From contig NC_047083.1 in the NCBI RefSeq assembly GCF_902459465.1, positions 124,001 to 188,000 of the forward strand: a stretch of DNA of 64,000 nucleotides. The letters run 5' to 3'. The notes under the pieces are model-generated. The model saw only the letters and a program-made list of their open reading frames with translations, searched no databases and was not told the DNA's origin. This stretch comes from Asterias rubens (Eukaryota). The position numbers were made by a program, and so were the translations under genes. This document shows positions 38,381 through 63,351 of the stretch, piece by piece; position 1 is the stretch's first letter, and each line of letters begins with the position of its first letter.

Positions 38381-41300
38381 TTATGGCCGAGCAGAAACAC
38401 CTTGTTGCAAGCTCTCTCGTTCCACTTTACGCTGATGTTGCTTGCAGTAAACCTTGCCATTAAACAAGGCATAGTTGGACAAACTGATGGAGAAAAATAA
38501 AGTAAAAAATGTTAAATCATACACCTCAGATTTAGTACCCTTAAAAGATTTTAAACGATTTAACCCAAGACTATTATATAACTCTTAAACAGGATGTTGA
38601 CATTGGTGTGGCAGAATAAGTTACTTAAACAATCAGAGATTTTTTGTTCCCCAACCATTTTTGAACAAATTATAATATAAAAAAAGCTCTAAATTCTCCC
38701 CTATTCTAGGCCATCAAAAAGTTGACTCAACAACTGTACCTTGTAACCTTCTTGCAGTGTTCACATTTGAAGCATTGCTTGTGGTATAACTTCTTAGCTA
38801 CTTCAAGACGTTCCAGAGTGTACACATTCTTGTTACAGATGATGCACTTATCATAAGCCGGTGCTTTCCAGGATGACTTTCCAGAAGACTGAGAAGAATC
38901 AAATTAAGACATAAGAAACTTGATTAATCTCCAAAAAGAAGAAATACATTGCTCACACAAGTTTAAAAAGCACCACAACTATCAAAAATTACAAAAGGCA
39001 GAAAAAATTAATAAAAACCATACACACCCAGACAGACCAGGTATATATAATTTTTAACTTTGATCAACATTTTTAAAATACACAATTATTAATGTTGTGG
39101 TTGTGACACAAAACCACAGCCCAAGAGATGCTGGCGGCAGAAGACATAACGATATTTTTTTTGAGACTCAGAGCGTGAGCCGGATGCTCAGTATTGCACG
39201 CATTGGTCTTAGCACACGCACAACTGGCGAGAACTGTGAAAACGGACCGCCCAAACGTCTCCAACTCTTCTGTAATAATTTAACGACCCTCACTCACCCT
39301 TTTGATGTCAGTCTGGTCCTCTCCATGTCCAATCTTTGTCTGGAACATATTTAGACGACCTTGAACTCCTCCGCTTGCTGCTATACCCTCATTACGCTCT
39401 TGTAAGAAAGACTTCTTCGCAGGCTAGAAACAAAAAACATTGAAAAACCATGTTAATCTTGAGAAAATCATAACACCAAATTTTAATTTTTACAAAAGAC
39501 TCCCTCACTGGCCGCCACTGTCGAGGTCAATCAATGGAAACGTACCATGTGTGTACAACTCTCAGCTAATGACAGGTGTTCCTTTGACCTTTGTGAGACA
39601 CTATTTGGGTTTGTGACATTACAATAATAAGAAGAAAAAGAAGAAGAAGAATACTTATAATGTCTAATAAATGTCAAACCTTGAGGCTCATGGCACGGAA
39701 AGAAACACAGACTTTAAAATAATAATAAAGCAATAATCCAAACAGCATAACAACTTTCAATACCAAAACAATATATAAAACTAAGCCAAACTACTCTTCT
39801 GGAAGAGATGGGTTTGGAGAGAAAGTTTATATGCAAGGAAGGAGTCTAATCCCAAAAATACCTTTTTGTCTTCAACAAAGAATCCTTTCTCCTTGATCTT
39901 GCTCACATGTCTACAAAGAAAACGAAAGCAAACATGAATTATTGGCACGATTATTTCAAATAATGTGACTACCAAATAACCAAGATCTACAAGTTAACTG
40001 TAAAATCGTAAAAATCTCAACATTACACTGTTTCTACTCACCCAGTATCTATGGTGATCACAATAGGCTTCTTGGGAGTACTGCAAAAAGATTAACAACA
40101 AACGTTTCAGGGTCTTAATTTTGGTGTAGTATAACCAGCTTTAATATTGTTTTCTTTACTGTGAGATCGCCTAACATCAAATGGCCAGATGGCCCTTTCA
40201 AGGTGAGAGCTTCATGTTACTGATTTGGGCTATATACCCAAATCAAACTTATGAGGCACACTTTATATACGTTTTATACACTTAATTTACAAATAAAATT
40301 GTTTCAACTGTTATTTTATTCATCTTCTAGTTTTCTCAGTCATTAACTATACTTACGCCACTTTACTCAAGTCGGCTATGCGTTGCTGCAACTCGACCAA
40401 CTAAAAACAAATTAAGAAAATTATCCTCATTAATATAAGACAGTTTGAGCCTAATTCCTCATAAATATTATCCAAGAGAAGTTGGAATTAGTGTCAAGCA
40501 TTCATCATCTCAGTCCCTTGAAAATTTTAGTTCAAATCAACAACATTTATTTCTATTTTACATTATATCTCATGTGCCGATATCATACAAAATAATGGTA
40601 TATAATAGTAGGAATAAGGCAGAGTTAGTGAAATGGAGACAAGCTTCGGTAATATACTCACATCATAATCTTGACGTTTTCTACGTTTCATCAAGTCAAA
40701 CTTTACTTCATATACTTCAACCAGCTTGGCCTAGAGAGAGGATAAATGCCAATACAGTATTAAATCAGTTCTTCATTATCATTCGCAACTTAAACTTCAA
40801 AAATGGATTTACTTCAAGGGAAGGAAATGGAAACAAGTTTATTATTTATAGTTAATTCCTATCATATTAACCACACCAGGCAAAGCTTTAAACACTACTT
40901 AATATACAGAGTGTTCCACGGTTGCCTTTACCTGAAGATTTAAGGCAAGTTCCTTGAGGCGTTCCATACTGGTATGAGAAGAGACGCTGAGGGGAGGGAC
41001 ACGTTCATCAAGAATCGTCTCCTTATGATAAGCAAGCTCCTCAGGTGTCATGTCTCGTTCCTTCTCAGCTTGGAAAATACTGTCCTGAAATATTCAACAA
41101 TTAAACATAGATTAAGAAATCCACCTCAGCTCAAACAAACCCTAAACTGTAAATAATTAGTTGAGGCCTGACGACAATTCAACTCTAACAGAGTCATGTT
41201 GTTGTTAAGCTTTCGAGAGAGACTCTGCTAGGGTCAAAACATCAGGCCATTAACTATTGTTGCATTTATACCATCTGGCTTTTTGTTGTATGTTGTTTGC

Positions 41301-43915
41301 AACAGCTAATTCTATTTTCTGTAAATAAATAATCATTTTAAAAGTAAATTTAGCTGAATGTTTGGAATTGAACAAAGTGTTTGTCCTTACCGAGATGCTG
41401 TACATGGGTTGAACATACTCCAAGGAATTCTGGATATTTCGACGTTTCTCCTCGGCTTCTTGACGACGTTTTTGAATCTCTTCACGAAGCTTCTTAGCAT
41501 CCTCCTTTAGTCAGAAATATAAAGTAAATCTTGATCAAGTCCAGATTCAAAGGAAAGAGTTCACCATGAGAATTAACAATAATATTAACTCAAGAAACAA
41601 ATAAGCACATCAACAGATAATTTAGACAGAGAAAGTTTTCTTATCTCACCGCTTCGCGAGCAAGTCTTTCTTCCTCCTCCTGTTTCTGACGCTGCTCGTC
41701 TTCTTCGTGTTTACGTCGACGACGCTCCTGAAAGAAAAACACACAGAAATCTTGTCTTAACTCTCAGACTTTACTCTTGTAACATTACAATTACAGGTAA
41801 CATCAGGGAGAACATTGATCAAGAAAATATAGTAGCAATCAGTATAAAAACAATAATTTTGAAACACATGATTGTTTTTATAAACTAAGAGTAAAAGATG
41901 AAAATCAAATGTTTATAAAAATAGCAACGCACCCTCCTTTCCTCAAGCTCTTGCCGTTCCAGTTCACCCTGCTGTCTACTCAAGCGAATTTCCTCCCTCT
42001 GTTCTCTGTAACGCTCTTCTTGTTCATGCTCACGTTTCAGACGAAGCTCCTGAAACATCGACAGTAAATCTCATCGATTTAAACTTAAATTTGAACATCA
42101 ATTCAAATTTGGTGATAAGTTTGACCTCCTGAAAATGAGTGTTTCAGTTTAGTTTTTTAAATAGTTTTTTACACAAAATTTGAGATAGTAATCCACTTTT
42201 TTAAATTGTCATATTCACCTCAGCTTTTCTTTCTGCTTCATTGATATCAGATTTATCATCTGACCTCTCAAGGGTGATCCTGAAGGAAAAAAAACAGAAA
42301 ATCATCAACTTGAATTTAATTGAAAAACAAACTTATTTACTATTAAACTCTGAATAATATCTTTCATTCTCACTAATGACTATTATTTATGTAACCAAGA
42401 TATTCCAACGAAAAAAACATTTCTGAAAGTAAAAGTAAAACTTACTCTGTCGTCCTTTTCTGGAATAAGAGAAGAAAGAAACAGAAACAAATTGTTAATT
42501 TCAAAACCTTTCAAAATGAAACAAAGAAGAGAGTAAATTTCTGTTTAAAACAAAATGTTTCATTCGTGTTGTTCAAAGCACATTTTCAGTTTCAAACACA
42601 CAGCTAATTTCGGCTATTGTAAAAGACCAGTGTTCACGCACTCATTGGGACCTTACATACAAAAACAACTTCTTTTTTTATTTGCAAATTTGATAAGTCA
42701 TCAGATTCAAAAGTAAATTGTGGAAAACCCCTGCTCACCACTGCTTTTGAAGGCTAATTCTTTCAATCTTTTCTCAAAATCTGACACATTTCGGGGCAAA
42801 GATTTTTCAACTAATTTTCACTATGATTATCTGAAAATTGCCTAATAACTGTGCACAAGATCAAAACTTATCAATGTTATGCATACCCTATAAAATTTAT
42901 TTCAAAGACATTTAAAGCAGCCTGCTTTCAAAGAAACAAGAGTTTATTTCTATTTTAAGGATGGGATGGGATAATTGATTGAACTGATAACAAATGATTT
43001 CAAATGTACAACTATTACTATCTAAGACTCCTCTAACACCACAAAACACTGCAAGAAATGCAAAATGTATAGATCTATAAACAACAACATTAAAAGCATC
43101 GGTAACTTCAACCAAAACATTTTTTGAAAAAGTGAATGGGAAAGACATCACAGTACTTAACCAGCTACACACGAAATATATTATGCATAAAAGAAAATGT
43201 GTGGAGTTTGTTAATAATGTTTGAGATGCACAAAAACGCGTCACTTTGAAAGAAATGTTTACAAGAAAACAATGTATTCCCAATGAAAATGTCTTGAAAT
43301 GCCACAATATTCAACTAAACACTCACTGTATGTGTTAGTATTAGTAATAAAAATGTTCGTGCAAAGTCTGAACTTTGACCTACAAGTTGACCCGAGTTTA
43401 CACTTCCAACTGAATTTTCTTCCTCCTCACTTGATTGGTCGCTATTCTGCTGACAAAGTAATGAACATTCATGATTTATAACTGGTTACATGTACATTAT
43501 GAGGGATATCAGAAACCTAACATTTTAAACTTCCAGTACATAAGCAGGCTTAAAAAAAGTGTTAACACTTCTTTGCCAACAATTTAACAACTAAGAAAAA
43601 AACAAATTCTCCAAACTTACCAACTTCACTTCCATTTCGGATCCATTTTGACGGGAACTATGATAAGAAGTTTTTATCACAGTCACATTCTCCTTTGAGG
43701 CAGCTCTTGAAAATTAAAAAAGGATTTTTTTTCTTCTTTTAAAAAAACACATTTGGATTTGTAACTTAACATTGAATTAATAACAAATCTGAAAAAGAAT
43801 TAATCATCACCATGGTAACCAATACTTACAATTCTCTATCGTCTTGTTCTTTTTCTTCCTGTCTCCGACGACGACGCTCCTCACGACGACGAGCACGTTC
43901 ATCATCAGCCATCAT
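38381..43915 (-). CDS. Troponin T-like protein with a C-terminal LIM domain, about 428 aa
   Basis: Exons 43830-43915, 43621-43705, 42446-42459, 42219-42279, 41933-42049, 41650-41727, 41391-41504, 40932-41084, 40662-40730, 40357-40400, 40042-40080, 39862-39910, 39298-39423, 38740-38888 and 38381-38483 (1287 nt). An E/R-rich helix leads into the TnT T2 core MTPEELAYHKETILDERVPPLSV...LKELALNLQAKLVEVYEVKFDLMKRRKRQDYDLVELQQRI. The LIM domain is CIICNKNVYTLERLEVAKKLYHKQCFKCEHCKKVTSLSNYALFNGKVYCKQH. Confidence 0.85.
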
Positions 43916-45333
43916 AATGTTTATTAACTAACGACCTGTTCAAATTATTAGAGGTAGAGTCATTCTTTGGATTTTGTCAAGACTAATTTGTAAACAACAT
44001 TATCATAAAGAATTTAATAACAGTCACCTGTGTGAGTTTCAGTTCAACACATCAACTCTTGTCTAGGCCTACTTGTTGAGAAAACAGCCAAAAATTGTAT
44101 ACAGAAAATTCCATGAAGCATGAAAACCAATATAAAGAATATATACAGTCAGACATCAATTATTGGGAGGGGGAGCAAGATACCTCCCTTAGTTACATAA
44201 ATAAGGACAGTTAAGATCCTCGCAATTAACACCCTTTGCTTTGCTATTAATATTAAACATACAGATGAAATGACAGGCAACAGCTTATGTCAACAATCCT
44301 TTCAACATCAATATGATAATCTGAAACACAGATATAATAATTAATAGTACATTAAATTATTAATAGGCCGATTTTAAATGTTATACTTTACATTTATGAT
44401 AAAACGGAGTTCCAAATGCGCATAATATTTCTGTCGTTAACTTTCAAAATCAAATAAAAATTTTAACAATCCCATATTATACAAAGTTTAAAAACTATTA
44501 ATTAATTATTAAAACGTATTTAATTTTAAACACTGTAGTGTAAAAATACTGAATAATTATCGATATATTGTTAAAAGAAACAGCCGTACCAACAATATGG
44601 AGCGGAAGCTTCACTTCTCAATCAATTTTAAATGCCTTTTGGGGGACAATTGAACCATTTCCGCACCACCCCAGACCTAGCCAGCTCGAATCTAATATAA
44701 TAAGTCCGAGCTTTCAGCCTTGTTTACAGTCCAACTTGCCCGCCGTGACGCGACGCCCACACACCGCGCACACCACCTGCCAGAAAGGGGTGCACTACGT
44801 CAAAAATACTCGTCAAAGGAAAGTGTTGGCATCAAAAGTTTCAGATTAACAATACCACAAATCATCCTAAATTTACAATACATCAACCAACTCACAACAT
44901 ATACCATTAAAACATGATGCATATTTACCTTAAAAGCTGTTTTCTGGGTTCAAATAAACTCGGAACTTTGCGAATCCACAAGTAGTCGCGAACTGTTTTC
45001 ACACAAATCTGGGTACTTCACACAATCACTGGTTCCATATCGATCGTGGAGTAATTCCCTTTGATTGGCGGACACCAGCTAGGATTCGTTTTATTGACAT
45101 TTCGTGTGTTGACCTCAAACAAACAAATACTTAGTGAACTTTACATTCCAGCTTTGTAAGGGACCGTATCAAAAGTTGCGTTCGTCTGTTTACTTATTGT
45201 GCTTATTGTAGGTCCAAAATTGTCACAAAAAGTAGTCACATTATTCAGTATCTCTGAAAAGAAAACTTGCTCGTTAGAATACACCAAATGAAATAATGAT
45301 GTACATAGCTATATATATGGTACAACCATACCG

Positions 45334-45737
45334 GGTGTCGTATGCAATTATGTCCTCTATGCAATAATGTCTGCCGGACGGTTTTGCATATGCAATCGTG
45401 TCCGCCCGGACGCTGCTGCATAATGCAATTGTGTCCGCCCGGACACAGTTGCATATGCAGTTGTGTCCGCCCCGTGCAAAACCGACCTTGCAGTAGTAAA
45501 CGTCCTTGGTCGACGGAACACCTTCGCAATTTTTTTAATGGACATTCGCTGCAATCATAAAATACTTGAATATTCATGCTGCATATTAATACGTAGGTCA
45601 AGTGCATGCACGCCCGTTTACGCGCGTACAGTCATGTCCACACAGGACGGTTTTTGCATAGCCCCGGACACGATTGCATATGCAAAAGTGTCCGGAGCGG
45701 ACAGTATTGCATGGCGGACACAGTTGCATCTGGCACC
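45334..45737. mobile_element. MITE with subterminal TGTCCGCC/ATGCA repeats, between the two TnT-like genes
   Basis: The 22-bp TIR matches 17/22 (GGTGTCGTATGCAATTATGTCC vs GGACACAGTTGCATCTGGCACC). Several internal TGTCCGCCCGGAC..TGCATATGCA units are inverted between the two halves. Confidence 0.8.
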
Positions 45738-46597
45738 ACAAAAGGCACTTCACTTGCCTTTTTTAACCAGTAGAGGGCAGCATATAATAATATAACCAGT
45801 ATCAGCCCGTTTGGCCAATTATGACGTAGTTGTAAGGAATGACAAGTATGTCTAAGATGATGATAACAAGGTCCCTCCGTGAAGATCAAGAAAGAAGAGG
45901 AAAGTGAAGATCGTTTCATCTCGTCTTGCTGCTGGTCTGCCAAGGATACGGGTTGAAGTTCAAGAAGAGTTATTCCGCTCCAGAAGAAAGGTAAAAACTA
46001 AAACTTTTCCAATTTAATTAAGACAAGTTCAGGCATTTAATGTTAATTATTGAGGAGAGTTAATGATGACTATGGTAACACCGTATAGGAGGGCCTCCAT
46101 AATAATACCATGGTTTTACTATGGGCAAAAATTATGAGAGACAAATCAAAAAACTTGTTCAACAAGACGAGCCAATATTTTCATAATGGAGAAAATTATT
46201 AATTTGAGCCTTTATTTTATTGTATAGAGAAAACATTGAAAACGTCTTCATACAATAAAACCTCCTCATCAATTTTACTTTTAGATTGCTGTTTCAAAAA
46301 ACAATATTAAAATTTTAAATCTTAAAAACAGTCACGCATTTATTTTTGTACAATTAATTTTTTAGTAATTCATTATGTATACAGGCATGAAGATTTACAA
46401 AGTAACATAGCCTATTTTGTTCTTAATAGAAAACATAAAAATAGACTTATTCTCTTTAATTTATATTATTTCGTCCTGGCAACAACTGACGCCAAAAGCT
46501 CCACAAGGCCATGCCATTGCCCCTCTGGTAACTCAACAGCGAATACTATTCATCTCTGTAATTTCAACAGCACATGTAACCGTACACATTTTGAAGC

Positions 46598-46607
46598 CCA
46601 AATAAGG
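46598..46607. promoter_or_regulatory. CArG box (SRF site) about 345 bp upstream of the + strand TnT start codon
   Basis: CCAAATAAGG is an exact match to CC(A/T)6GG. Function is inferred only from its position next to a muscle gene. Confidence 0.45.
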
Positions 46608-46950
46608 GGCTTAGTTATGCCATAGAGCAAGGACCCGCTCTTGCTGCTATAATGGTTAAGCCAACCTTAAAGGGGTTCAACTGTGTTTATATACTCGTGT
46701 TGAACGTTGTCAAAGTCGCCAACACTTTCTTTAAAAAATTTGACATTAATTTATGATGGGTTTATATTATGTGCTTTTATTAAGACTATGTACACAAAGT
46801 TGGGCTGGATTTTACAATAAATTTTGATTAGAACCTCCCCAAAATACATCGTCGATCAGTGTAGGAAACCTCTGAATTGGGTCTTTTCTTAAAATTGTAC
46901 TATTATTTTGTAACCACAGTTTTACGGGAAGATAATAAAACAACCTCAAG

Positions 46951-49900
46951 ATGGCAGCACCAGAAAGGTAAAAATAATAAAATAATTTGTATGAATATTT
47001 AAACAAAATTAATTATATTATTATGGTATTCAGGATTGGTACATGGATTTAACATAAAAATAATAGACAACATGTGATAATATATTTATGGGCTTCAACC
47101 GTCGACGTGTTATTCTAACGTCTAATAATAATTCTGAACTATTTCTTTTGATCCTATTAGTGAAGAGTCTGAAACCATGGCAGTAATTAAGGTAAGAACA
47201 AAAAGGACCTTGAATCTTTAATAACATTCACAATAAATATCATCGGAATCAAACGCTTTGCAAAATTTATTTACATCTAAATCATGCTAGGCCTACATCA
47301 CGATACTTTATCTAAGACGAACAGTTCCAAGAAGCGCTGGATATCACCTCTGAGAAATAAAGCTTTTGGACAAGAAGTTTTCTGAAAACTTCAAGAAATG
47401 AAGTGTGCTTGTTCACAATAAGGAATAGTTGTGATAACGTTATAACCCTCCTCTATGGTATCGCAACTAAATAAGGAACACTTTTTCGTGATAACAAAGA
47501 ATAGGACTATATTTTGTTTATACCGATGTGTATAAGCTCTGTATAACTGTTCATTGCTATTACATAATGTCTCGTGTAGGGTTAAAACTAGTTTATATCA
47601 TTTGTCCCCGATGCAAAAATAGATCCGAGAATAACATGACAATATCAACATAATTGTGAACCTTTTGGTGTTACCGCAAACCTTTCTATATCGTATTTCC
47701 ACCATGCAAAGTTTCAAACCCTACTAAACATTTTGTTTGTTTCTTTTTAATGTTAGGAAAGAGAAGAGAAAAGGAAAGAGGAGCTCAAGATGGAATTAAT
47801 TGAAGCTCGAGATGAGATTCGTAGAAAGAGTGAAGAAAAGGCGAAAGAACTTCAAGAACTTCGCGCTAAAAGGGTAAAGTTTAAATTACTCAAATCAAAG
47901 GAAGTGGATGACATAATGTAGTGGTGGATAGAACTGTCCACTGTTGATCAAGAAACCGCGCATGGTTGGCAAGAACCGCCGAATGTTATTTTAAACACTC
48001 GAAGTTTTAACAAAATTCAAGTATCTTCTGCAACATTTCAATTAAATAATACCCCCCCCCCCCCCATGATTGGCTGCTTTTGTTTCCAATAAAATTCAAC
48101 ACAACGTTTGAATATTATTGCGTAACATTGTTAGAAACAGTGCCTATTGCAGTTTATGGCTTTCCGTGTACAGATTTTGTCCAACCTCGCTTAGCAAAAC
48201 CTCGCCATGAATGCAATAGAAAGGACATCCATATGGACCGTAAAGGGGGTAACCCTGTTTCAGCCCCAGGAGAAGGTGGCAAAGACCCCTGGACAAAATT
48301 GTAGCCCACACCTAAGAGTGGCCTTCAGGCCTTCTGTCTGGCGACTTGCATACAAAAAACTCAGCGTAATGCCTATACAAATTATTTTAAATTGGTGCTT
48401 AATTTTCAAACTGTTATTTTTCTTGTCAGGATGCACGTCGTGCTCAGCAAGCTGAGGAACAAAAACTACGGGAACAATATGAAGCAGAGAGACGAGAAAA
48501 GGAGAAAGTAGAGAAACAAAAACGGAAGGAGATGTTAGAAATGAAGAAGAAGGAGAGAGAAGCTAGCCTCAAGGCAATGCACAATCCGGATGCTTATCAT
48601 GCCATCATTGTTGAGGCAAGTGCTATTTCATTGTTTCATCTGCATTTTTTAACGACACAAAAGGGGATCAGATTAAGATCACCAAATAGGATAGCCTCAT
48701 TGTCTAAATGTGTGCTCATACTATAAGAGTCAACGTGTCAATAAGTAACATTCAATATGATACAAATCTCACATTGGAACCCATTTTAATTTAAAACGAA
48801 GTTGACTTTGTTGTTGACTTTGTTGTAAACAAAAAGAGGGTATTTTTTAACTTTCTGTAGAAGGAAGAGCCGAAGAAAAAACCCAAGAAGTCCCAGGAAG
48901 AACTTGAGAAAGAGAAAGAGGCAGCGATGAGGGAACGGATCCAACCTCTATCAATCGGTAAATAAGAAACATGTTTTATTTTCACAACCAGTCAAAATTT
49001 GATTTAAGAAAATACAAGTTGTGTGAACAATCTTTAAAATGTAAAAAATCACCGTAAAACCCCCTCCCTATTACACCTTGTTCTTAAAAACCAAAATCTG
49101 AGATCTACAAGAAAGTAAAACTTCGGGGACAATTTGGTTTTACTCTTACACCGATGTGTGTAAGCATTGTATCCTTAGTATAGGCCGACCTTCCAATTTC
49201 TGTGAACTAAAACCACAGGCATTTACTCGGAGGAATTCGAACACACGACCTTCTTTATTGGCCGATTCTTAATCCCTGGGGCATTGTGCAAATTAAACAA
49301 TCATCTATTAAATTCGTCGACAATGATAACTGAATCTTAAACCATTTTTGAAAACCTTTATTCAGTTCAACCGACCTAAACCCGATTACTATAACCATTT
49401 ATGCTATTTAGGAGGAAGCACTGCTGAAGAGAAGATTCGTGAGATAGCACGCAACCTTCTTCAGAGACTGAGTAACATCTATGCTGATATCTTTGATATG
49501 AAATGTCGCAAGAAACGCCAGGTGTATGATGTAAGATATAAGTTTTAATAATTTAGCGTCAAAATCCGCCTTCAAAAAAAAAAACGCTCAAGGCGCTATA
49601 ACAGATTAAAATAAGAAAATCAAGGAAGGCAATAAACATATACCGAAGATATAAAACAATTACATCTAGTATTAATTATAAATGTTATGGACGTTTGGAT
49701 TTGGATTTCATTTACTAGAACAACATATATTGGTCAATTGACATCATCACCTCAATACATCTTGGTTGCTCCATTTTGGGCGTCAATTATTATATCCCCC
49801 GTGTAGGCCTATATGTTTTATATTCAGTGCTAATTTTAAGGTGACGCACTCGCGTTCACAGGCTCTTCATAATACTTGCAACATTTGACTCTCAAAATGG

Positions 49901-51591
49901 CATGCAAACCATGCATGCAGACAGTATAAACGCGCATGTGACGTCATACGAGGGGATCAAACGGATTTATTTCAAAAATAAATGACAAAATCAATCAATG
50001 GATATCATTGAGTAATTTGAGGTTTTTTTAATTTTATTTTCAGCATACTGAACTGCTTCAACGCATCGCAGATTTAACCAAGGTCAAAGAGTAAGTAGTA
50101 CTAGCTTGTATTTATTTCCATAAAATGTCGTTTTCCTCAATAATTTGTGGCATATTTCGTTCATTACAATTAAATGTTCTTATCGTTTTTGTTGTTGTTT
50201 TTATTCCTCCGCAGGCCACATTCTGCTGAGGCTGCTGGAACGTGAGTACACTAAGTGACAGTCGGTGACAACGACAATGACATTTTGTTGACAACACGAC
50301 AAGAAAACAAGTACCAAAAAAATGACAACACTTAAAGATTAATAAATAAATAAGAAATCATAATAGTCACGTGACATGGCGAAAGAATGACAGGGACACA
50401 AAGAAATATCAATGTATACGTTCTTGTTGACGTTCATATATTTTCACATCGTTTTTCAGTGTACACAAGTTCAAAGATGGAGGCGTATTCAAACCTCAGG
50501 TAAGAAACCATTCATGAATATTCACGACCCTTTCGCTACATGAAAACTGAAACTGGAAGTACAGCTTCTTAAAACTAAAAACGACAGAGTCCTATCTTGA
50601 CTTCCATTTTGTTTTGTTGGATTCTTAAATCCAGGAGCACGACCATAAGACGAAGATGCAGATGGACGCAGAAGCCGGTTCTATAATGTCTTCCGGTGGG
50701 GTCAAAGGTCGATCTGGGATGTTTGGGGGAGGCTCTGAGAAGAAAACCCCGGTAAGTCACGTGTTGTGTGATGAATAAAAACCAGCAAGAATCTAAGAAT
50801 GAATGAAGTCTCGAAATGATACCAAACTCTAAAAACTCCCAGGTCAGAATTGACTATGATTCCGGGTCCCATGGGGTCTGACCCATTTAAGGGTCAGTGT
50901 GACCCACAATCTGTGCCAATGAAACGTAGAAATGGGTCAAACTGATGCACAATCCAAGTTAACATCCCATTATTATTGTTAAATCGGTTTGGGTCAATCT
51001 GACCCAGAAATATTTCACGAGACCCTGACTCCAAGTCAATTCTGACCCGAGAGGTTTTTAGGGAGCTCAAAATGGCTGTGATTTTGATATTATGTAGGAT
51101 CAAAGCAAATTGAATCGTGCTCAACCAATAACTGTCAGATTTAATTGGAAGAAAAACTAGTTTTGTATGACTAATGTGCTGACGTCACAGGCATGACACC
51201 CGGCCCCGTTAATAGAAAGATCTCAAGACTAAAACATACTCTTCATTAATACCTATACCTGAGTGATATTATGAAGTATTAGATCAATGCAGAAGGTGTT
51301 AACAATTTAGCCAAATAATATTACGTTTATGGCAAACTGACATTAAACGCAACTCAAATAACTGTCCCGAGTCCGACTTGACCCCAGCAAGACAGACACG
51401 TACAAGACGAATGCGTTTCCCCCTTTTATGCTAACACTGTTAATGAAAAAAGGTTGAATAAAGAGGCATAAAAATGGCTCGAACACACAACAATTAGAAC
51501 TAAACAAGTAAAACCCTGCCATAACACGCGCTTAACAAGCATGTCAAATATTACCCATTCTTTATTTATACAGGAGGATGACGAAGGCTAA
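46951..51591 (+). CDS. Troponin T-like protein, 271 aa
   Basis: Exons 46951-46967, 47161-47191, 47757-47873, 48430-48615 (GC donor), 48861-48957, 49412-49530, 50044-50090, 50215-50241, 50460-50499, 50635-50751 and 51574-51591 (816 nt). The core KKSQEELEKEKEAAMRERIQPLSIGG..EEKIREIARNLLQRLSNIYADIFDMKCRKKRQVYDHTELLQRI matches the TnT pattern EEK..l..RI.PL.I....l.ekA.eL.......KyDl..r.kRQ.YDl.EL..R. Confidence 0.88.
50826..51065. mobile_element. MITE with about 30-bp TIRs, in the last TnT intron
   Basis: ACTCTAAAAACTCCCAGGTCAGAATTGACT at left vs AGTCAATTCTGACCCGAGAGGTTTTTAGGGAG at right, with internal GGGTCA/TGACCC repeats. Confidence 0.75.
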
Positions 51592-52769
51592 CATTAACGG
51601 AGATTCTGAAAGAACTTGAGCATCAAATGAGGTTTTGGCGCCAAATTAAGTTTGCTTTCCCGCCATCTTGCCTATTGAATATCTGCTGCATGATCGAATA
51701 AACCTCAACAGCAGAACGTTTAAATTAATTTGTAACCAATGTAGATTAGAACCGTGTGTTCAGCCTTTTGGTTGTAATGCTTTAAAAATAAAACCAGAGG
51801 GCCTTTTTCATTGTTAAACACACCTTTTGATAAGTGTTATTTCGGGGAGGAAACTTAATATTAGAAGTCTTCACTGTTGCAGTAATACAGATACAACTTG
51901 TATTTATAAAAAATGTTTGTTTGGGTTGCTATTTTTAAACAACTTTCTGCAAACTTCCATCTTACTACAAAGAACCATTGATCGTATTTTCAAAACTTGG
52001 CAACAAATTTACCAGATTGTGTTAGGATTTTAGAACGCTTGACAATTAAAAGATATGAAACTTTCACAAAATAGTTTGCATTATATTGTCTGGTATCTAA
52101 GCTTCAATTGTTAATATTGTGCATTCCTTCGTTTCATCTCCCTCTCCGCAGGGTTTGGATCGGGCTCAGACTATTGATCTGACCAAGTGATTGGCTCAGT
52201 AGCAACCAAAGGGGTGCTTTGCAGTGTATCACGTGGTATATTGTTTAAGTTTTACTTTCGAAATTGTGTCGACCAACATGAAACCAAAACTACTGGATAG
52301 AAGAAGTTTTCCTGGAACACAATCAAAGCGTCACTGGACGCCAATTTGCGAATCTTCCGCAACATTTGAAGTAAAATTCCATTATTACGCAAACGGCAAT
52401 AAAAGTTTTCAAAATGCAGTCTTGATCTCACTAGACGACAAACAATCTTAACATAAACTCTCTACTTGTTTAACCCAAAACCTTCATCTGTATTGTTAAT
52501 GTTATTACTGTATTCTAATTTCAGGGCCTCTTCTAACAAGTCAGTAAAAATTCAACAACTGTTCAAGACGACTTGAAATGTTCACTCTGTTGTAATTTCC
52601 TTGTGATAAAGATGTGAAACAGAAAGGAAACTCGGAATAACTTAAAGAGGACCGTGGGTTCACATTCTACCTGGTCCTCGACCGACCATCATTATGTCAG
52701 AATACCATACGGAGCTTTAGAAGTACCATCAGACTTGTCTAGATTCTGATATAGTCCGGATTAAGATAT

Positions 52770-52955
52770 CAGAACTCAATTTCACAACAACTTGCTTAGC
52801 ACAGAAAGTATTTCTAAAAAGAAATAGGCTACGAGCATAAATCACAATAAGTTTACATGATTGTTTTGACTGGTTCCCCACTCATCATTTCTTGCCTAGC
52901 AAAGGAGTTCGTCAAGCAGGGCTGAGTTTTTGAACAGCTTTATGAAATTGCCCAC
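52770..52955. mobile_element. Degenerate MITE related to the 1460-1723 element
   Basis: Ends CAATTTCAC... and ...GCTTTATGAAATTGCCC, with an internal GCTTAGCACAGAAA. Confidence 0.5.
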
Positions 52956-53963: not shown

Positions 53964-54148
53964 TAAAAACCACATTTCTAAACCATATTTAAACCGCGCT
54001 TTTCATAGACCAACTCGCCTGATCCATGCAACGTGCCCCTTCAAAGTACACTTCATTATGTTATAAAGTTCATCAATTCCTAGAATATACAAGAATCGAG
54101 TCGCGTCGTACACCAAGTGTTTGGTTATCACTCTGTGATAAATAAGTT

Positions 54149-54193
54149 GGGGTAGGGGCGTTGGGGTAGGGGCGTTGGGGTAGGGGCGTGGGG
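54149..54193 (+). repeat. G-rich 14-bp repeat with G-quadruplex potential
   Basis: (GGGGTAGGGGCGTT) x3 plus GGGG gives seven G4 runs with 2-4 nt loops. Confidence 0.85.
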
Positions 54194-57100: not shown

Positions 57101-58624
57101 GGTTTTTGTTTTCTTTTTTACAAATAAAGACAAATAAATGCAGTGGAAGACTTCTTTATATGCACATTTTGAAAATACAGTAAACTAGTTACTATGTATA
57201 AACGGAGAAAAAAAAAAAAAAGGCTATAAATAACATGAGGGTCGCACATAGTAACAATGAGCTGTATATATTTGCATTTCTTTTTAAATGTCATCAGTTA
57301 ACACACTACATTATTCTAATACACTGATAAATATTCATAAGTCATGAATATGTAAAAATGCTAATATATTCTACAATTAATAACTAAACCTGTACACACC
57401 TATTAATAAACCAACATATAAAAGGACAACCCACTCTTACAGGGGGTATATGAATATTCATTTATAAATAGTGACTTTCAGTAAGTTATTCAATGCCCAA
57501 AAATAGCATTCTTTGAAATTGTGACCATGGCAACAAGATTTAAAAAAGAGAGAGAAAAATCTACATAAAAGACTGGAAGGAACGATTGGATTCTTCCTCC
57601 TCCAGGTTTGGGGCGGGGGGGGGGGGGGAGGGGGTCTACGGCAAGCTTTGAATTGAATCAATTATCTACTAAGCTACTGTAGAGTCTGGCGTGTAACAAT
57701 GTGAAGTACAGCACACTCCTGTAAAAACAATCAAAACAAAAAAAGATTCATTATTTTATCATACAGTTTAATATTTTGTGCATTTATCAGAATTCATCAA
57801 ATAATACAACAATTTTTTTTTTATAGATTGTATGGTATTTCCCATCAAAATTCAAATACATGGTATGGTTTTATGTACTTTTTGAAAATGCTGCACAGTG
57901 GAAAACAAAGTTCATGTGTTTTCATACGATGAACAAAAAAATTGAATTGAATTGAACGATGATGAGAAGAAACAATGCAGTAACAAGTAAATAATCTCAT
58001 TGTTGCAATTTGGTTTAAAACTTTTGTTGTTATTGATTGTTTTCATACTGTCAATGTTTTCTTTATAAACAAAATCCTGCTCATAATACAACTGGACTTT
58101 CATTGGATTTCCCCGAGGTTCTTTCTGCCACTTTATCATTTTAAGATATTGTTCTTACCTGTTTACGTTCTAACTGCACACAAATTGAGAAATCAGTCTT
58201 AATTAGTGACTTCATGTTTCTTCAAACTCTCACGGAAATCAGATTTATGCTGGAGATAAAACAAGAAAAGTACGAGACCATATGTAAGATTACACTCCTA
58301 TTATATTTGCGGATGTATAAATAAATTCTTGAATGAAAGATCTCATGCGACCTGATAATAATGTCAACTTATAATATAGCACATAAAAGTCCACATAAAA
58401 GATGATCAAGGCACTTCACACACACAAAAAAAACAAGACCAAAAACATCTTATCTAAGTAATTATTAAAGTAATCTAATAAATTCTTAAACAACAGCTAA
58501 CAATGTTTAAATCATTAAAAAGTATAAAGTATATTGCAAACCAAAAAGGGGGGGGGGGGGGGAGAAGAAAGAAAGTTGCATTGTAATTTTTACAGAGAAA
58601 AATTGAACTGGATAAAGTTGTTTT

Positions 58625-61600
58625 TCAAACCTGGTCAGTTTTGTCTTCTGATTTCTTCTCTACTTTCTTCAATGTTGGCTTCACACTGAAAATAAACATA
58701 CAAATCAAGAGTCAGGAATCATCTTACTCAGAACTTCAGACAATCTGATCTGATTGGCTGCATATTGCACCCCAGCACCTTGTAAACCATCACTTGGTGC
58801 TATTCGAATAAATCTGTCTCATACTTCAAAGAGACGCACCAAATATTTCAGTACAGACAGAATAGTTTGAGATAAAACTACTGAGAAGAATTGCTACTTA
58901 CAATCTACCCTTTATTTCCATTGCTCTTCTGTTCAGCTCGTCAATCTACAAAAATCATCACATCAAAAAAACACAACTGTTACACAAATGTAATATGAAT
59001 ACAAAATTCCTCAAAGCACTTGACAGCAAAATGAAAAGCATTAAGAAACAAAAACATAGAGTAACGAAGAACCAATCACTTTCAAATGTCTTACATCCAA
59101 ATCTTTATCTCGGACTTCAACTTCTAGATCATATTTATCACTTTCAGCTAGTACGAGTTGCTCATGAAGTCTTTCACAGAGTGCTTTAAGATCTCGTTGA
59201 CTCATGGAGTCTACATCGACCATCTTAACATTATCATTAATGAATTGAGATTTCTCAGCAGCAGTCTCTGTCTTTTCCTTCTGAAGGTCTTGACCAGCTT
59301 TCTTCATCATCATGGCCTAAAGACAGAGAAAACAAGTTTTTAATTTTAAAGTTATACACTGGGAAGAATTGGTTTGATCCACCCACCTACTTCACGTTTT
59401 GATTATTAAATATTGAATGGTGTTTTAATGTAATCTATACACGGAACAACAAAATATTGCTTCAAATATACCAGATATTTTAGATCAAAGGTTTTCAACA
59501 TCAGTAGTTTTCTGTGACTTTTCCTTTTAATCAGAGTAGAAATTGATGATCTTGGCGTCTTTTCACACTTACCTTGATATTCATCTTACGACCTGATTTC
59601 ATTTTGCCCATAAGTGACATTTTCTTCCCCTCAGCGGGTGGAGCCGCCGTTTCTCCATTCTCAGCGGGTGCAGCTGGTTTCTTCTTACGCTACAATCAAC
59701 AATAAAGTTATATTTATTTCATTTCTCTGACAGATTAAAAGTACAATATAGCACATTGGTAAAAGCATTAAAAGATACACTAGGCCTAATGAAATAATAA
59801 TAATCAGCTTTTATACAGCACCATTAACCCCCAAAAGGGTCCTGTGGTGCTTTACATAGGTTACAAATATTAAGCAAGTTAAGAAAATAATGAACAATTT
59901 AAGAAAAACAGATAAGAATGCATAAGAAAATTACAACTGACCAAAGACAATTTTTTTACAAATTTAAGTAACAACAATACTGGACAATTTAAGATAAACT
60001 GAGAACAATTCAAATACAGAGGAATGAAAGAGAACCAGCTTGAGCTTGAAGGATTGCCTAAAAGAAAAAAAATCATGTCTAGAGGCTCTCCTCTCAAGTT
60101 AACTTGAACTTCCTTGGATCATTCTACAGGAAATGCCATCTGTAAACCATCAAATTCACATACAATTCAATTCAATAAATTTATTATTAACATCACATTA
60201 AAATCTTATGATAAAAAAAACCAAGAAATATTTGTAAAATAGAAAAAAATAACTATAAAAATATAAACGGGACAAAATACACAGTGACAGAAATATTTAC
60301 AATTATACAATTATCTAAAAAATAACAAAAATTCTTATACAGTGCATGTTTGTACATAAAATACAGACTAAATGTCAATTCAAGTCAATTTTATATATTT
60401 TATCACAAGTTAAAAATGATCCAGAATGAACAACTTTTCACAGCAATTTAAGTAACTAAGATGGCAACCTTTGGGGTCTTCTTTCCTCACTAGAAATAAA
60501 CTTTAAAAACGACTCCAGCTACGATTAAATAATCTTACCTCTTCTTCCTCTCGTTTCTTTTTGCGATCAGCGTCGGCTTTTGCCTCAGCTTCCTTCCTTT
60601 TCCGTTCCTGAATAATAATAAAAATAAAAATAAACATAATAGTAAAGTATTTATAGAGAGCCCCACCCCAATCCAACACTAGTGGACACCATGGTGACAC
60701 CATGTTAGAAATCTCTTTTATGAGTAGTGGTTGCTCCGAGATCTCATAATATGACTTGTGAATAGAGAAAAGTAAATGTCTTACTTCACCAACGAGAGAC
60801 AATTGTGGTAAGAAAATGTTAGGACTAAGTAAGGTTTGTGGTGTTACCATGTTAGAAGAATCTTTTATGAGTAGTGGTTGCTCTGAGAGGAGACGGTTTC
60901 TGCTTGATGTTTTCAATTAGTTTGCTCTGACCCTCTCCTGGAGAGCACACTGACCAAAACATGGAGCAGTACAAACCGGCTCTTCTTAGAGCCATAATTA
61001 CTCACAAAAGAAATTCTACATGGTGTCACCTGAACCTGAACTAGCTGAACCTGAACCTGAACTGCAAACCTTACTCACAAAGTATGATCTTATTTAAAGG
61101 CAATTTATGCCTGTCCATAAGGGTACAAGTAACATTCCTTAAGAACAAGGGACTGCCCCGTTTTTTCCAGCGTGCCTATCCTGAAGTCTTAATCGCTCCT
61201 ACCTCATCTTGCTTGCGTTTCTTCTCCTCAGCTAGTCTCTGTCTTTCTTCTTCTTCTTCTTGTCTACGTCGTTCCTCTTCTTGAGCTGCTTCTTCTTGCT
61301 GTTGTTGCTCCTAATCAATCACAATGTCATTAAGAGGAAGGTGTAAGTGGAAACATTTAGTGGCAATGAAAACTTATTTGTTAGAAGTCCAAAGCAGCTT
61401 TCAAAAGCATTTTGAGAAACATTTCACTTCGAAGTAATGTGGTTATACATGTGAGATCAGTTTTAATACCCCAATATTTGACTCTGGGAAGCGTTATACT
61501 GCAGTAATGCTTCATGTAAGATCAGTTTTAATACCCCAATATTTGACTCTGGGAAGCGTTATACTGCAGTAATGCTTCATGTAAGATCAGTTTTAATACC

Positions 61601-63351
61601 CCAATATTTGACTCTGGGAAGCGTTATACTGCAGTAATGCTTCATGTAAGATCAGTTTTAATACCCCAATATTTGACTCTGGGAAGCGTTATACTGCAGT
61701 AATGCTTCTTAGATTGGTATTCATTTTCTGACTAATTCTTCCTGCATGAAACACTGACCTCTTCTTGTCTTTGACGCTCTTGCTCCTCTTCCTGCCTCCT
61801 TTGTTCTTCTTCTTCTTCTTGTGCTCTGGCTGCAGCTGCTTCTTCCTCCTGTTAACAATCAAGAATAATAATAGTAATAATGATACAGGCCTGGAATGAC
61901 ATGCAGGCCACAGAGGCAATGCCCTCTGTTCCCCCTGGTCTTGGCCTTGGTGCCCCTACAAAAGTTATTTTAATGCATTATTGGGTTTCTACCGGTGGTT
62001 TAAACAAACATAAAGACAACAAATTAAAATGATTAGGTTTGGGGGGAAGTTGACCTGTTTGGTTAATAAATGGAGGCATTAGTGGTTACCATGGATTGGG
62101 GGTAACTATGGATAGATGGTTGCTATGGAATGTTACAATAAATGGATTAAAACTATGGGTACATGGTTGCTATGGATAGGTTGTCATGATGGATAGATGG
62201 TTGCTAAGGAAGGTTACTATAAATGGATTTAACTATGTATACATGGTTGCTATGGATGTGTGGTAACTATGGATAGATGGTTGCTATGGATTGGTGGTAA
62301 CTATGGATAGATGGTTACTATGGATTGGTGGTAACTATGGCTATGTGGTTGCTATGGGTAGGAAGGTACTACAAATATGTCATTGCTCTGGATGGGTGGT
62401 TGCTATGGGTACGGTGGAGATAACTATTTGAAGTTTCTTTGGATCACCTTGCGTCTCTCTTCATCTTCATTATTGTTCTCCTCTTCCTGTTCAATCTCGT
62501 CTCTAGATGGACTGTCAGCCTGTTGACAAGAGTATGACAATGACAATGACAATGACAACAACATAAATGACAAACCTGCAATCAGATGTATTCAAATGTC
62601 AAATGATGATGTAATGACAAAGAGAAAATGGTTATCAAAATGGAAAGATGACAATGTCAATGATATTGAAATAATGACAAAAATGACAATGACAGTGACA
62701 ATTGTAACATTGTATTAGTGGTAAAACAAGGATAATGAAGTCAGCATGTAAGGTATTGCAGCTGCCAAACAAATGATAAAGCATTTACAACCCGTTTATA
62801 AGAAAAATGTGATCAAAGAATGAGATAAAATTAATTTTTGTGACTGTGACAAAGCTAATTTTCCAAGAACAACTTTTATTTTGTATAGAAATATTTTGCA
62901 GTGACACCGTGTTGATAACTCTCTTTCGAGTAGTGGTGGTTCTGAGAAATATCTGAGGGTTCAATGTTTCTGACAGTATACTCTCTCCGTCGTCAGGAGA
63001 CCGATAGAGACAACACTCTTCATCGTCAGGTGATGACAGACGGAGAATGTTGAGCCCTCCGCTTCTTCTCAGAACCACCGTCACTCCAAAAAGATTTATT
63101 TACATGCTATCACTGAAACCATTTTTTTTTTCCTTCAGTGAAGTGGTCGTTGGGAGGGTGTACTCACTTCATCATTTTCTACAACTGGTTCTGGCTCTGG
63201 TTCTGGTTGACGTTCTGGTTCTGGAGCTGGTTCAGGAACTCCCTCCTCTTCTCGTTGTCTTCTTTCTCTTCTTTCTCTCCTCCGTCTCTCAGCGTCTGTC
63301 TCCTCAGTAGGACCATTTGTTTCTATTGTTTCCGATTCACCTGCGTCCAGT
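58625..63351 (-). CDS. TNNI: Troponin I, long invertebrate-type N-terminus (5' end beyond the window)
   Basis: Exons 63168-63351, 62448-62519, 61759-61848, 61203-61310, 60539-60607, 59573-59689, 59095-59316, 58902-58945 and 58625-58685. The core reads GRKMNIKAMMMKKAGQDLQKEK...DLKALCERLHEQLVLAESDKYDLEVEVRDKDLDIDELNRRAMEIKGRFVKPTLKKV, including the TnI inhibitory peptide (G[KR]F.KP.L[KR][KR]V). The first exon seen starts in phase 2, so upstream coding exons are missing. The 3' end may continue through further exons. Confidence 0.92.
61448..61708. repeat. Near-perfect 65-bp tandem repeat x4 in a TnI intron
   Basis: CATGT(A/G)AGATCAGTTTTAATACCCCAATATTTGACTCTGGGAAGCGTTATACTGCAGTAATGCTT starts at 61448, 61513, 61578 and 61643. 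Confidence 0.95.
62085..62410. repeat. Degenerate minisatellite of (G)GTTGCTATGG / GGTAACTATGG motifs in a TnI intron
   Basis: About 15 recurrences of GTT(G/A)CTATGG or GTAACTATGG, spaced about 17-25 bp. Confidence 0.8.
62924..63091. mobile_element. MITE with about 25-bp imperfect TIRs
   Basis: TTTCGAGTAGTGGTGGTTCTGAGAA at left vs TTCTCAGAACCACCGTCACTCCAAAA at right. Related fragments lie near 60715 and 60866. Confidence 0.7.

What the first reader, a model, noticed from the sequence alone, without database searches (positions are those of the whole stretch)
38381..63351. Three-gene troponin cluster (TnT-LIM <- -> TnT -> <- TnI) in a probable echinoderm
Seen in sequence: two intact multi-exon troponin T-like genes and one troponin I gene lie within 25 kb, with no other recognisable gene between them. 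Established: vertebrate TnI and TnT genes occur as linked pairs (TNNI2-TNNT3, TNNI1-TNNT2, TNNI3-TNNT1). Echinoderms were long regarded as lacking troponin; from memory, TnI was later reported in sea urchin larvae, while TnT was less clearly documented. Inference: TnI-TnT linkage may predate chordates, and this lineage may keep a divergent thin-filament regulatory system with two specialised TnT subunits. No troponin C gene is in the window.
Basis: partly seen in the sequence, partly recalled or inferred. Interest (0 to 1): 0.85.

Follow-up and report, generated by a model that had tools for sequence, protein, structure and literature searches.

The report
Sea star troponin gene cluster
In the common starfish, the genes for one troponin I and two old troponin T relatives (one ending in an extra LIM zinc-finger part) lie side by side within 25 kb; the genes are real, but four other echinoderm genomes do not keep troponin I next to the pair, so ancient linkage is not shown.

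Summary
The window is Asterias rubens (record LR699113.1). It holds three troponin-family genes with no other recognisable gene between them:
- TnT-A with a LIM domain: 43915-38381, minus strand, 15 coding exons, identical to RefSeq XP_033645905.1.
- TnT-B: 46951-52190, plus strand, 11 exons, 278 aa.
- TnI: 63351-58625, minus strand, with its 5' end outside the window.

Both TnT-like proteins belong to troponin T. An echinoderm profile matches solved TnT chains collinearly over T1 and T2 (E 1e-13), against 4e-5 for TnI. The TnI stops 11 residues after the inhibitory peptide, like the published sea urchin TnI.

The A/B duplication predates the sea star/sea urchin split. The head-to-head A-B pair is kept in Acanthaster and Patiria. 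Urchins encode both modules in one gene.

TnI was not found within 10 kb of the TnT genes in those two sea stars or in two urchins. No TnT lies within 10 kb of a mussel TnI. Pre-chordate TnI-TnT linkage is therefore unproven.

The gene content (one TnI, two TnT, no TnC) was published in 2018. I found no paper on the Asterias cluster, the TnT-LIM fusion or the shared C-terminal tail. The scan had already noted the LIM fusion and the short TnI on this same window.

The parts
38381..43915 (-). TnT-A (troponin T paralogue with a C-terminal LIM domain). CDS of 15 exons: 43915-43830, 43705-43621, 42459-42446, 42279-42219, 42049-41933, 41727-41650, 41504-41391, 41084-40932, 40730-40662, 40400-40357, 40080-40042, 39910-39862, 39423-39298, 38888-38740, 38483-38381.
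   Evidence: Exact threading of RefSeq XP_033645905.1 (P0030, 428 aa). On this protein Pfam gives LIM 34.3 bits, Troponin 23.4 bits and Caldesmon 23.3 bits.
40357..42049 (-). TnT-A troponin part: the T1-like helix (42049-41391) and the T2/IT-arm core (41084-40932, 40730-40662, 40400-40357). The core includes ...ERLKELALNLQAKLVEVYEVKFDLMKRRKRQDYDLVELQQRIADLSKV.
   Evidence: The A. planci orthologue aligns at residues 111-298 to cardiac TnT 93-275. Profile A5 scores 54 bits against TnT chains.
39298..40080 (-). TnT-A tail exons, carrying two conserved motifs (GHVSKIKEKGFF and SGGVQGRLNMF).
   Evidence: The motifs are conserved in all echinoderm TnT modules aligned (A3). Exon phases are conserved across them.
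38381..38888 (-). The two LIM-domain exons of TnT-A. All eight zinc ligands are present: C-x2-C-x17-H-x2-C-x2-C-x2-C-x17-C-x2-H.
   Evidence: Read directly. Pfam LIM 34.3 bits. The best solved relative of the orthologue's LIM is EPLIN/LIMA1, 2d8y, E 6e-16. This part is 84% identical to P. miniata.
46951..52190 (+). TnT-B (troponin T paralogue without LIM), 278 aa. CDS of 11 exons: 46951-46967, 47161-47191, 47757-47873, 48430-48615 (GC donor), 48861-48957, 49412-49530, 50044-50090, 50215-50241, 50460-50499, 50635-50751, 52152-52190.
   Evidence: Model built from the orthologues P0020 and P0021. NCBI calls a 278-aa gene over exactly this span. The P. miniata orthologue aligns at residues 4-205 to cardiac TnT 83-279, E 5e-7.
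43916..46950 (.). Spacer of 3.0 kb between the two divergent start codons of TnT-A and TnT-B. It may hold a shared control region (inferred).
   Evidence: Coordinates. No Pfam match in its ORFs. It contains a 32-bp tandem repeat of 3.6 copies at 45358-45472.
58625..63351 (-). Troponin I, visible part of 258 aa. Exons: 63351-63168, 61848-61759, 61310-61203, 60607-60539 (Glu/Arg/Pro-rich N-terminal extension), 59316-59095 (core), 58945-58902, 58685-58625 (inhibitory peptide GRFVKPTLKKV, then stop). The 5' exons lie beyond the window.
   Evidence: Pfam Troponin 54.3 bits on the core exon. Best solved matches are TnI chains, E 7e-6.

Best explanation
The region holds what is probably the whole troponin-family gene set of the starfish Asterias rubens. 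It comprises two troponin T paralogues transcribed away from each other, with start codons 3 kb apart, and a troponin I gene lying tail-to-tail with the second one.

**Shown**
- All three are ordinary spliced genes.
- Both TnT proteins keep the tropomyosin-binding-type T1 helix and the T2 helix that pairs with TnI.
- Both carry an extra tail of about 70 residues with two conserved motifs.
- TnT-A continues into one EPLIN-type LIM zinc finger, which is among the best-conserved parts of the protein.
- TnI has a long acidic N-terminal extension, the TnT-pairing helix and the actin-binding inhibitory peptide. It stops 11 residues later, without the TnC-binding switch helix or the C-terminal domain.
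- The A/B split is older than the sea star/sea urchin divergence.

**Inferred**
- Each TnT forms a TnI-TnT pair through the IT-arm coiled coil and sits on tropomyosin-actin filaments without troponin C, which published surveys do not find in ambulacrarians.
- Inhibition comes from the TnI peptide.
- The tail, and in TnT-A the LIM domain, add further actin-filament or calmodulin contacts, giving two kinds of thin-filament complex.

**Unresolved**
- Whether the closeness of TnI to the pair in Asterias is inherited or recent.
For: - **Gene models.** Exact threading of P0030. The TnT-B model matches the NCBI-called gene in span and length. The TnI exons are in phase.
- **Family.** Pfam Troponin scores 54.3 bits on the TnI core exon, and 27.6 bits (cut-off 26.2) together with LIM on the A. 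planci TnT-A orthologue. Single TnT-A and TnT-B orthologues hit TnT chains at 2e-5 and 5e-7, ahead of TnI at 7e-3 and 0.04. The echinoderm profile A5 hits TnT at 1e-13 over T1 plus T2, and TnI at 4e-5.
- **The fusion is real.** The same TnT-tail-LIM architecture, with the same exon phases, occurs in four sea stars and in every annotated isoform.
- **Purifying selection.** Synonymous sites are saturated while dN is 0.1-0.3. The LIM is 84% and the tail 83% identical between A. rubens and P. miniata.
- **Age of the paralogues.** The tree splits (A + urchin module 1) from (B + urchin module 2) with 96/95 support.
- **Short TnI.** It matches the sea urchin TnI described in PMC5341096. Muscle expression of echinoderm TnI is reported in PMC5341096, PMC12588293 and PMC11925454.
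Against: - No expression or protein data for these three starfish genes were examined here.
- The A. rubens TnT-A and the TnT-B orthologues fall below Pfam's Troponin cut-off when scanned singly (23.4, 16.7 and 19.9 bits against 26.2).
- PMC5888912 judged the tropomyosin-binding sites of ambulacrarian TnT poorly conserved.
- Classic biochemistry classed echinoderm muscle as myosin-regulated (PMC2226187).
- The tail has no significant match to any Pfam family.
- The LIM function is a guess.
- The spliced A. rubens TnT-B and TnI models themselves could not be sent to the family tools.
Confidence: 0.75

Rival explanations
1. The TnI-TnT adjacency in Asterias is a relic of the original tandem duplication that made TnI and TnT. 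It would then be the same linkage as the vertebrate TNNI-TNNT pairs, broken up independently in other lineages.
For: - TnI and TnT are sister families, thought to have arisen by duplication before the protostome-deuterostome split (PMC9825255, PMC5888912).
- By my estimate, random placement of TnI within 10 kb of the TnT pair has a probability of about 5e-5.
- Vertebrates keep three or four such pairs (PMC9825255).
Against: - No TnI lies within 10 kb of the TnT genes in two valvatid sea stars and two urchins.
- No TnT lies within 10 kb of Mytilus TnI.
- TNNI and TNNT are not close in amphioxus or Ciona (PMC9825255).
- This reading needs at least four or five independent separations.
Confidence: 0.3
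2. The adjacency is a recent, lineage-specific rearrangement in the Asterias (forcipulatid) lineage and says nothing about ancestry.
For: - The A-B pair and the small gene downstream of TnT-A are syntenic with A. planci, but similarity stops after TnT-B.
- In A. planci an Exo_endo_phos gene follows TnT-B where Asterias has TnI.
Against: - A chance landing next to the only other troponin-family genes is very unlikely.
- Only 10 kb on each side could be inspected in the other species.
Confidence: 0.35
3. The two TnT-like proteins no longer act as troponin subunits. They would work as caldesmon- or EPLIN-like actin/tropomyosin side-binders, independent of TnI.
For: - The T1-like region matches caldesmon strongly (hhalign E 4e-13 over 93 columns; BLASTP 3e-5).
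- There are weak Pfam Caldesmon hits.
- The tail motifs EKGxF and GGVxGRxxMF line up with caldesmon's WEKGxVF and GVAGRINDW at the same spacing (hhalign P 0.007).
- The LIM is of EPLIN type.
- TnC is absent from ambulacrarians (PMC5888912).
Against: - The T2/IT-arm region, which I recall caldesmon lacks (not tested here), is conserved and scores as TnT (42.6 bits on T2-only chains).
- A TnI with an intact TnT-pairing helix is retained, and it is essential in urchin larval muscle (PMC5341096).
- The Caldesmon score is far below its cut-off (23 against 50 bits).
- The tail similarity is not significant by BLASTP.
Confidence: 0.15
4. The TnT-LIM fusion is an annotation artefact that merges a TnT gene with a separate downstream LIM gene.
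For: RefSeq models are computational, and the automatic names given to them are inconsistent ('trichohyalin-like', 'vicilin-like', 'troponin I-like').
Against: - Exon phases fit across the junction.
- The same junction exons occur in four species and in all listed isoforms.
- The tail exons that bridge TnT and LIM also exist in TnT-B and in both urchin modules.
- The LIM exons have no start exon of their own.
Confidence: 0.03

Closest known systems
Vertebrate TNNI-TNNT paired loci (TNNI1-TNNT2, TNNI2-TNNT3, TNNI3-TNNT1)
   Same: A troponin I gene and a troponin T gene lie within a few kb to tens of kb of each other. A third, TnT-related gene sits in the same locus: CALD1, LSP1 or LAD1 in vertebrates (PMC9825255), and TnT-A here.
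   Different: The order and orientation differ. Here both extra genes are full TnT homologues with a T2 region. The adjacency is not seen within 10 kb in four other echinoderm genomes, nor in amphioxus or Ciona (PMC9825255).
Sea urchin troponin I (HpTnI, LC187281; Yaguchi et al. 2017, PMC5341096)
   Same: Both have a long N-terminal extension, a conserved TnT-binding helix and inhibitory region, and no TnC-binding switch region.
   Different: The starfish gene is a different species' orthologue. Its 5' end is outside the window, so its full length is unknown. It lies next to the TnT genes.
Canonical troponin T (for example human cardiac TnT in 8uww, 9e2e)
   Same: The alignment is collinear over the T1 helix and the T2/IT-arm helices, ending at ...RIxDxxKV. 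Alternative splicing is confined to the N-terminal variable part.
   Different: There is an extra C-terminal tail of about 70 residues with two conserved motifs. TnT-A adds a LIM domain. TnT-B has no acidic N-terminal region. No troponin C partner is known in the phylum.
Caldesmon (CALD1; Pfam PF02029)
   Same: The Glu/Arg/Lys-rich T1-like helix is strongly similar. Two short tail motifs occur in the same order as caldesmon's C-terminal calmodulin/actin-binding motifs (the functional naming is from my own knowledge).
   Different: To my knowledge caldesmon has no T2/IT-arm region; I did not test this here. The Pfam score is below the cut-off. The tail resemblance is weak.
EPLIN/LIMA1 and LIMD2 single LIM domains
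   Same: The best solved relatives of the TnT-A LIM domain are 2d8y (E 6e-16) and 2lzu (E 4e-12). All eight zinc ligands are present.
   Different: Here the LIM domain is the C-terminus of a troponin T, an architecture I did not find described.
Sea urchin double-TnT gene (XP_030845415.1 in S. purpuratus, XP_041471434.1 in L. variegatus)
   Same: Its first module groups with starfish TnT-A and its second with TnT-B. The tail exons and phases are the same.
   Different: In urchins the two modules sit in one gene on one strand and there is no LIM domain. In starfish they are two divergent genes and A has the LIM.

Membership tests
Troponin T | Pfam Troponin domain (PF00992) at or above the gathering score | tested here: inconclusive
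   The A. planci TnT-A orthologue scores 27.6 bits against the 26.2 cut-off and urchin P0024 scores 39.6. A. rubens TnT-A scores 23.4, and the TnT-B orthologues 16.7 and 19.9, all below the cut-off. The model covers both TnI and TnT.
Troponin T | Collinear similarity to solved TnT over both the T1 (tropomyosin-binding) and T2 (TnI/TnC-binding) regions | tested here: met
   P0021 residues 4-205 align to cardiac TnT 83-279, E 5e-7. Profile A5 positions 24/36-210 align to TnT about 96-278, E 1e-13, 54 bits.
Troponin T | Closer to TnT than to its sister family TnI | tested here: met
   Against profile A5, TnT chains score 54 bits (42.6 for T2-only chains) and TnI chains 26 bits. Single sequences give the same order.
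Troponin T | Placement inside bilaterian TnT in a phylogeny that includes TnI and caldesmon | not tested
PMC5888912 reports ambulacrarian genes inside the TnT orthogroup.
Troponin T | Binds tropomyosin and TnI on muscle thin filaments | not testable with these tools
   This needs biochemistry or localisation. PMC5888912 notes poor conservation of the tropomyosin-binding sites.
Troponin I | Pfam Troponin domain with best similarity to TnI | tested here: met
   54.3 bits on the single core exon. The top 13 solved matches are all TnI chains, best E 7e-6; TnT chains score 0.06 or worse.
Troponin I | Inhibitory peptide (vertebrate GKFKRPTLRRV) | tested here: met
   GRFVKPTLKKV is read across exons 58945-58902 and 58685-58625.
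Troponin I | TnC-binding switch helix and C-terminal domain after the inhibitory peptide | tested here: not met
   A stop codon falls 11 residues after ...KKV. Mytilus TnI continues for about 40 residues. Sea urchin TnI shows the same absence (PMC5341096). Alternative downstream exons were not studied.
LIM domain (PF00412) | Two zinc fingers with eight Cys/His ligands at LIM spacing, and a Pfam score above the cut-off | tested here: met
   C-x2-C-x17-H-x2-C-x2-C-x2-C-x17-C-x2-H is read. Pfam LIM scores 34.3 bits against 22.9.
Caldesmon (PF02029) | Pfam Caldesmon at the gathering score; C-terminal actin/calmodulin-binding domain | tested here: not met
   Scores are 23.3 bits (TnT-A) and 36.7 bits (urchin) against a cut-off of 50, and only over the Glu-rich helix. 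The tail against the caldesmon C-terminus gives BLASTP E 0.3-3 and hhalign P 0.007.
Conserved TNNI-TNNT paired locus | TnI and TnT adjacent, and the adjacency shared by related lineages | tested here: inconclusive
   They are adjacent in A. rubens (about 6.4 kb between the stop codons). No TnI lies within 10 kb of the TnT genes in A. planci, P. miniata, S. purpuratus or L. variegatus. Larger distances could not be examined.

The most novel reading that the evidence does not exclude
The starfish locus (TnI, TnT, and a second TnT paralogue with added actin-binding parts) may preserve the ancestral deuterostome arrangement from which the vertebrate TNNI-(CALD1/LSP1/LAD1)-TNNT loci descend. Caldesmon, so far treated as a vertebrate novelty, would then be a derived TnT paralogue that kept the T1 helix and the tail motifs and lost the T2 region.
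Probability: 0.1. Interest if true: 0.8.

Novelty: new variant of a known kind. Interest (0 to 1): 0.5.

Why it matters
Echinoderm muscle was long thought to lack troponin. How a troponin without troponin C could regulate contraction is an open question raised by the sea urchin TnI work.

This locus gives exact gene models for all three partners in a tractable starfish. It shows that the two TnT forms are ancient and under purifying selection. It also shows that both carry a conserved tail, and one a LIM domain, which are natural candidates for the missing regulatory or anchoring contacts. That makes direct tests possible, such as pull-downs, calmodulin binding and knock-downs.

For genome evolution it provides a non-vertebrate case, the first I could find, of a TnI gene next to TnT genes. 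Because the neighbouring lineages examined do not share it, it does not yet settle whether the vertebrate pairing is ancestral.

Tried and rejected
1. **Representative-library search.** One TnT-A exon of 51 aa returned only four proteins. It still yielded the A. planci orthologue that unlocked the rest.
2. **Isoform X2 proteins.** They were not on record for locus look-up; the X1 isoforms were.
3. **Full-length echinoderm TnI.** A search seeded with TnI exons plus a long first row found only fragments and mussel TnI. TnI could therefore not be located in the other echinoderm genomes.
4. **Tail homology to caldesmon.** Pfam finds nothing in the tail, BLASTP is not significant and hhalign gives only P 0.007. 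I kept it as a lead, not a finding.
5. **In-frame stop after the ...RIADL(S/T)KV exon.** I first took it as a sign of a short tail-less isoform. It is simply what any phase-2 GTAAGT or GTGAGT donor gives, so I dropped it.
6. **Lone LIM-like half (GGKLYCKPH, 55268-55291, minus strand).** The match to the A. planci orthologue (P0003) has E 0.15 over 12 residues and there is no first half. I treated it as possibly chance.
7. **A. planci scaffold identity.** The published A. planci TnI identifier (oki41-31) hints at scaffold 41. I could not show that this is the scaffold carrying the TnT pair.
8. **Spliced models.** The A. rubens TnT-B and TnI models have no reference form, so they were not sent to the Pfam, PDB or structure tools. 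The identical RefSeq protein (TnT-A) and orthologues (TnT-B) were used instead.
9. **Structure prediction.** None was run, because long helices give uninformative fold matches.


Full report
**Origin of the window.** The window is eukaryotic, with about 36% G+C and short exons with GT-AG borders. Earlier scan notes call the genome a sea star. RefSeq protein XP_033645905.1 of Asterias rubens (P0030) threads onto the window without a single mismatch. The A. rubens record LR699113.1, positions 152381-177915, is identical to window 28381-53915. The window therefore corresponds to positions 124001-188000 of that record.

**TnT-A.** The protein has 428 aa and is encoded by 15 coding exons on the minus strand, 43915-38381. 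From N- to C-terminus it has:
- a variable N-terminal part;
- a long Glu/Arg/Lys-rich helix that includes ...KLREEIQKRRQEAEEKRR...;
- a core reading ...ERLKELALNLQAKLVEVYEVKFDLMKRRKRQDYDLVELQQRIADLSKV;
- a tail with the motifs GHVSKIKEKGFF and SGGVQGRLNMF;
- one complete LIM domain with all eight zinc ligands.

Pfam on this protein gives LIM 34.3 bits, Troponin 23.4 bits (cut-off 26.2) and Caldesmon 23.3 bits (cut-off 50). The A. planci orthologue passes the Troponin cut-off at 27.6 bits. Against solved structures, that orthologue's LIM is closest to EPLIN (E 6e-16). Its residues 111-298 align to cardiac TnT 93-275 at E 2e-5, ahead of TnI at 7e-3.

The same architecture is annotated in A. planci, P. 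miniata and A. amurensis. The automatic names vary: 'vicilin-like', 'troponin I-like', 'troponin T, cardiac muscle-like', 'trichohyalin-like'. All listed isoforms keep the LIM and differ only in N-terminal exons. Exon phases across the TnT-tail-LIM junction are identical in the three species whose models I threaded.

**TnT-B.** I built the model from the A. planci and P. miniata orthologues, both named 'troponin T, cardiac muscle isoforms-like'. It has 11 exons, spans 46951-52190 on the plus strand and encodes 278 aa. One intron has a GC donor at 48616, where both other species have GT. NCBI calls a 278-aa gene over exactly this span. The P. miniata orthologue aligns at residues 4-205 to cardiac TnT 83-279 (E 5e-7; TnI 0.04). 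A single 39-aa exon of the window already ranks 13 TnT chains first. TnT-B has the same tail motifs (TVHKFKDGGVF and SGGVKGRSGMF) but no LIM.

**TnI.** Seven in-phase exons on the minus strand encode:
- a Pro/Glu/Arg-rich extension;
- the helix AMMMKKAGQDL...LKALCERLHEQLVLAESDKYDLEVEVRDKDLD;
- then IDELNRRAMEIKGRFVKPTLKKVEKKSEDKTDQV and a stop.

The core exon scores 54.3 bits on Pfam Troponin and matches TnI chains best. The protein ends 11 residues after the inhibitory peptide, whereas mussel TnI goes on for about 40 residues. This matches the published sea urchin TnI, which has a long N-terminal extension and no TnC-binding switch region (PMC5341096). No start exon lies between 63352 and 64000, so the gene runs off the window.

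**Family assignment.** A profile of eight echinoderm TnT modules (A5) hits solved TnT chains at E 1e-13 (54 bits) over T1 plus T2. It hits T2-only TnT chains at 4e-10 and TnI chains at 4e-5. Both paralogues are therefore troponin T homologues, not generic coiled coils. Similarity to caldesmon is strong but confined to the T1-like helix (hhalign E 4e-13 over 93 columns; BLASTP 3e-5).

The tail is conserved in every echinoderm module. It lines up with caldesmon's WEKGxVF and GVAGRINDW motifs at the same spacing, but only weakly (hhalign P 0.007; BLASTP not significant). Pfam sees nothing there.

**History of the paralogues.** Sea urchins encode two TnT modules in one gene on one strand, without a LIM. 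In an unrooted tree, starfish A groups with urchin module 1 and starfish B with module 2, with 96/95 support on the separating branch. The duplication therefore predates the asteroid-echinoid split, and the two copies have stayed neighbours in both lineages.

Between A. rubens and the two valvatid sea stars, synonymous sites are saturated and dN is 0.1-0.3. The LIM and the tail are the best-conserved parts against P. miniata, at 84% and 83% identity.

**Synteny.**
- The head-to-head A-B pair and a small gene downstream of TnT-A are conserved in A. planci and P. miniata.
- TnI is not. No TnI exon was found by tblastn or tblastx in the 10 kb beyond either end of the pair in those species, nor beside the urchin genes.
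- In A. planci an Exo_endo_phos gene follows TnT-B.
- No TnT lies within 10 kb of TnI in Mytilus trossulus.
- Joyce et al. report that TNNI and TNNT are not close in amphioxus or Ciona. They also report that CALD1, LSP1 or LAD1 lies between the vertebrate pairs (PMC9825255).

The Asterias adjacency is hard to get by chance, about 5e-5 by my estimate. It is nonetheless not shown to be shared. Distances beyond 10 kb could not be inspected.

**Literature.** Inoue and Satoh (2018) counted TNNI 1, TNNT 2 and TNNC 0 in A. planci and noted poorly conserved tropomyosin-binding sites (PMC5888912). Echinoderm TnI is expressed in muscle (PMC5341096, PMC12588293, PMC11925454). Searches for TnT with a LIM domain in sea stars, and for TNNI-TNNT synteny in ambulacrarians, found nothing.

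**Verdict.** The genes and their unusual features are real. The gene complement and the short TnI are already known. The cluster in Asterias, the TnT-LIM fusion, the shared tail and the A/B orthology with the urchin modules appear undescribed. The claim of pre-chordate linkage remains open.

Noticed in passing
window 60973-61017 (+), inside a TnI intron: An Rfam histone 3' stem-loop match just above the gathering score (34.7 against 34 bits). The stem is GGCTCT/AGAGCC with loop TCTT, followed about 13 nt later by a purine-rich CACAAAAGAAA. No histone ORF lies upstream. A block of about 40 nt is repeated at 60700-60745 and 60848-60890.
   Followed up: partly
window 61448-61708, inside a TnI intron: A near-perfect tandem repeat, 65 bp in 4.0 copies with 99% matches.
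   Followed up: no
window 55268-55291 (-): A lone LIM-second-half-like peptide (VLIGGKLYCKPH) 3.3 kb downstream of the TnI stop. It sits behind an AG in the same phase as the last LIM exon of TnT-A. No first half was found and the match has E 0.15, so it may be chance or a relic.
   Followed up: partly
window 48616 (+): The TnT-B intron after exon 48430-48615 uses a GC donor (GCAAGT) in A. rubens. A. planci and P. miniata have GT at the same position.
   Followed up: yes
L005 10001-48896 (S. purpuratus) and L006 10001-37191 (L. variegatus): Sea urchins encode two complete TnT modules one after the other in a single annotated gene (581 and 443 aa), with no LIM. The automatic names include 'protein MNN4' and 'trichohyalin'.
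   Followed up: partly
window 28381-36742 (+): NCBI-called neighbours downstream of TnT-A are a 173-aa gene (34973-36742, conserved in A. planci), a methyltransferase-domain gene (31431-33453) and an IFTAP-domain gene (from 28381).
   Followed up: no
window 5783-7851 (+) and 1-2000: Long stop-free stretches come from a short repeated unit (...FSSEKFT...RAKSSQGYSLVHFFERKVHKAIALY...). The first 2 kb have unusual composition (46% G+C, GC skew -0.52).
   Followed up: no
window 11891-13513, 16897-17196 and 20653-20967 (-): Ankyrin-repeat-like exons and what looks like a calponin-homology exon (by eye, not tested) lie on the minus strand upstream of the troponin region. They probably belong to one or two further genes.
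   Followed up: no
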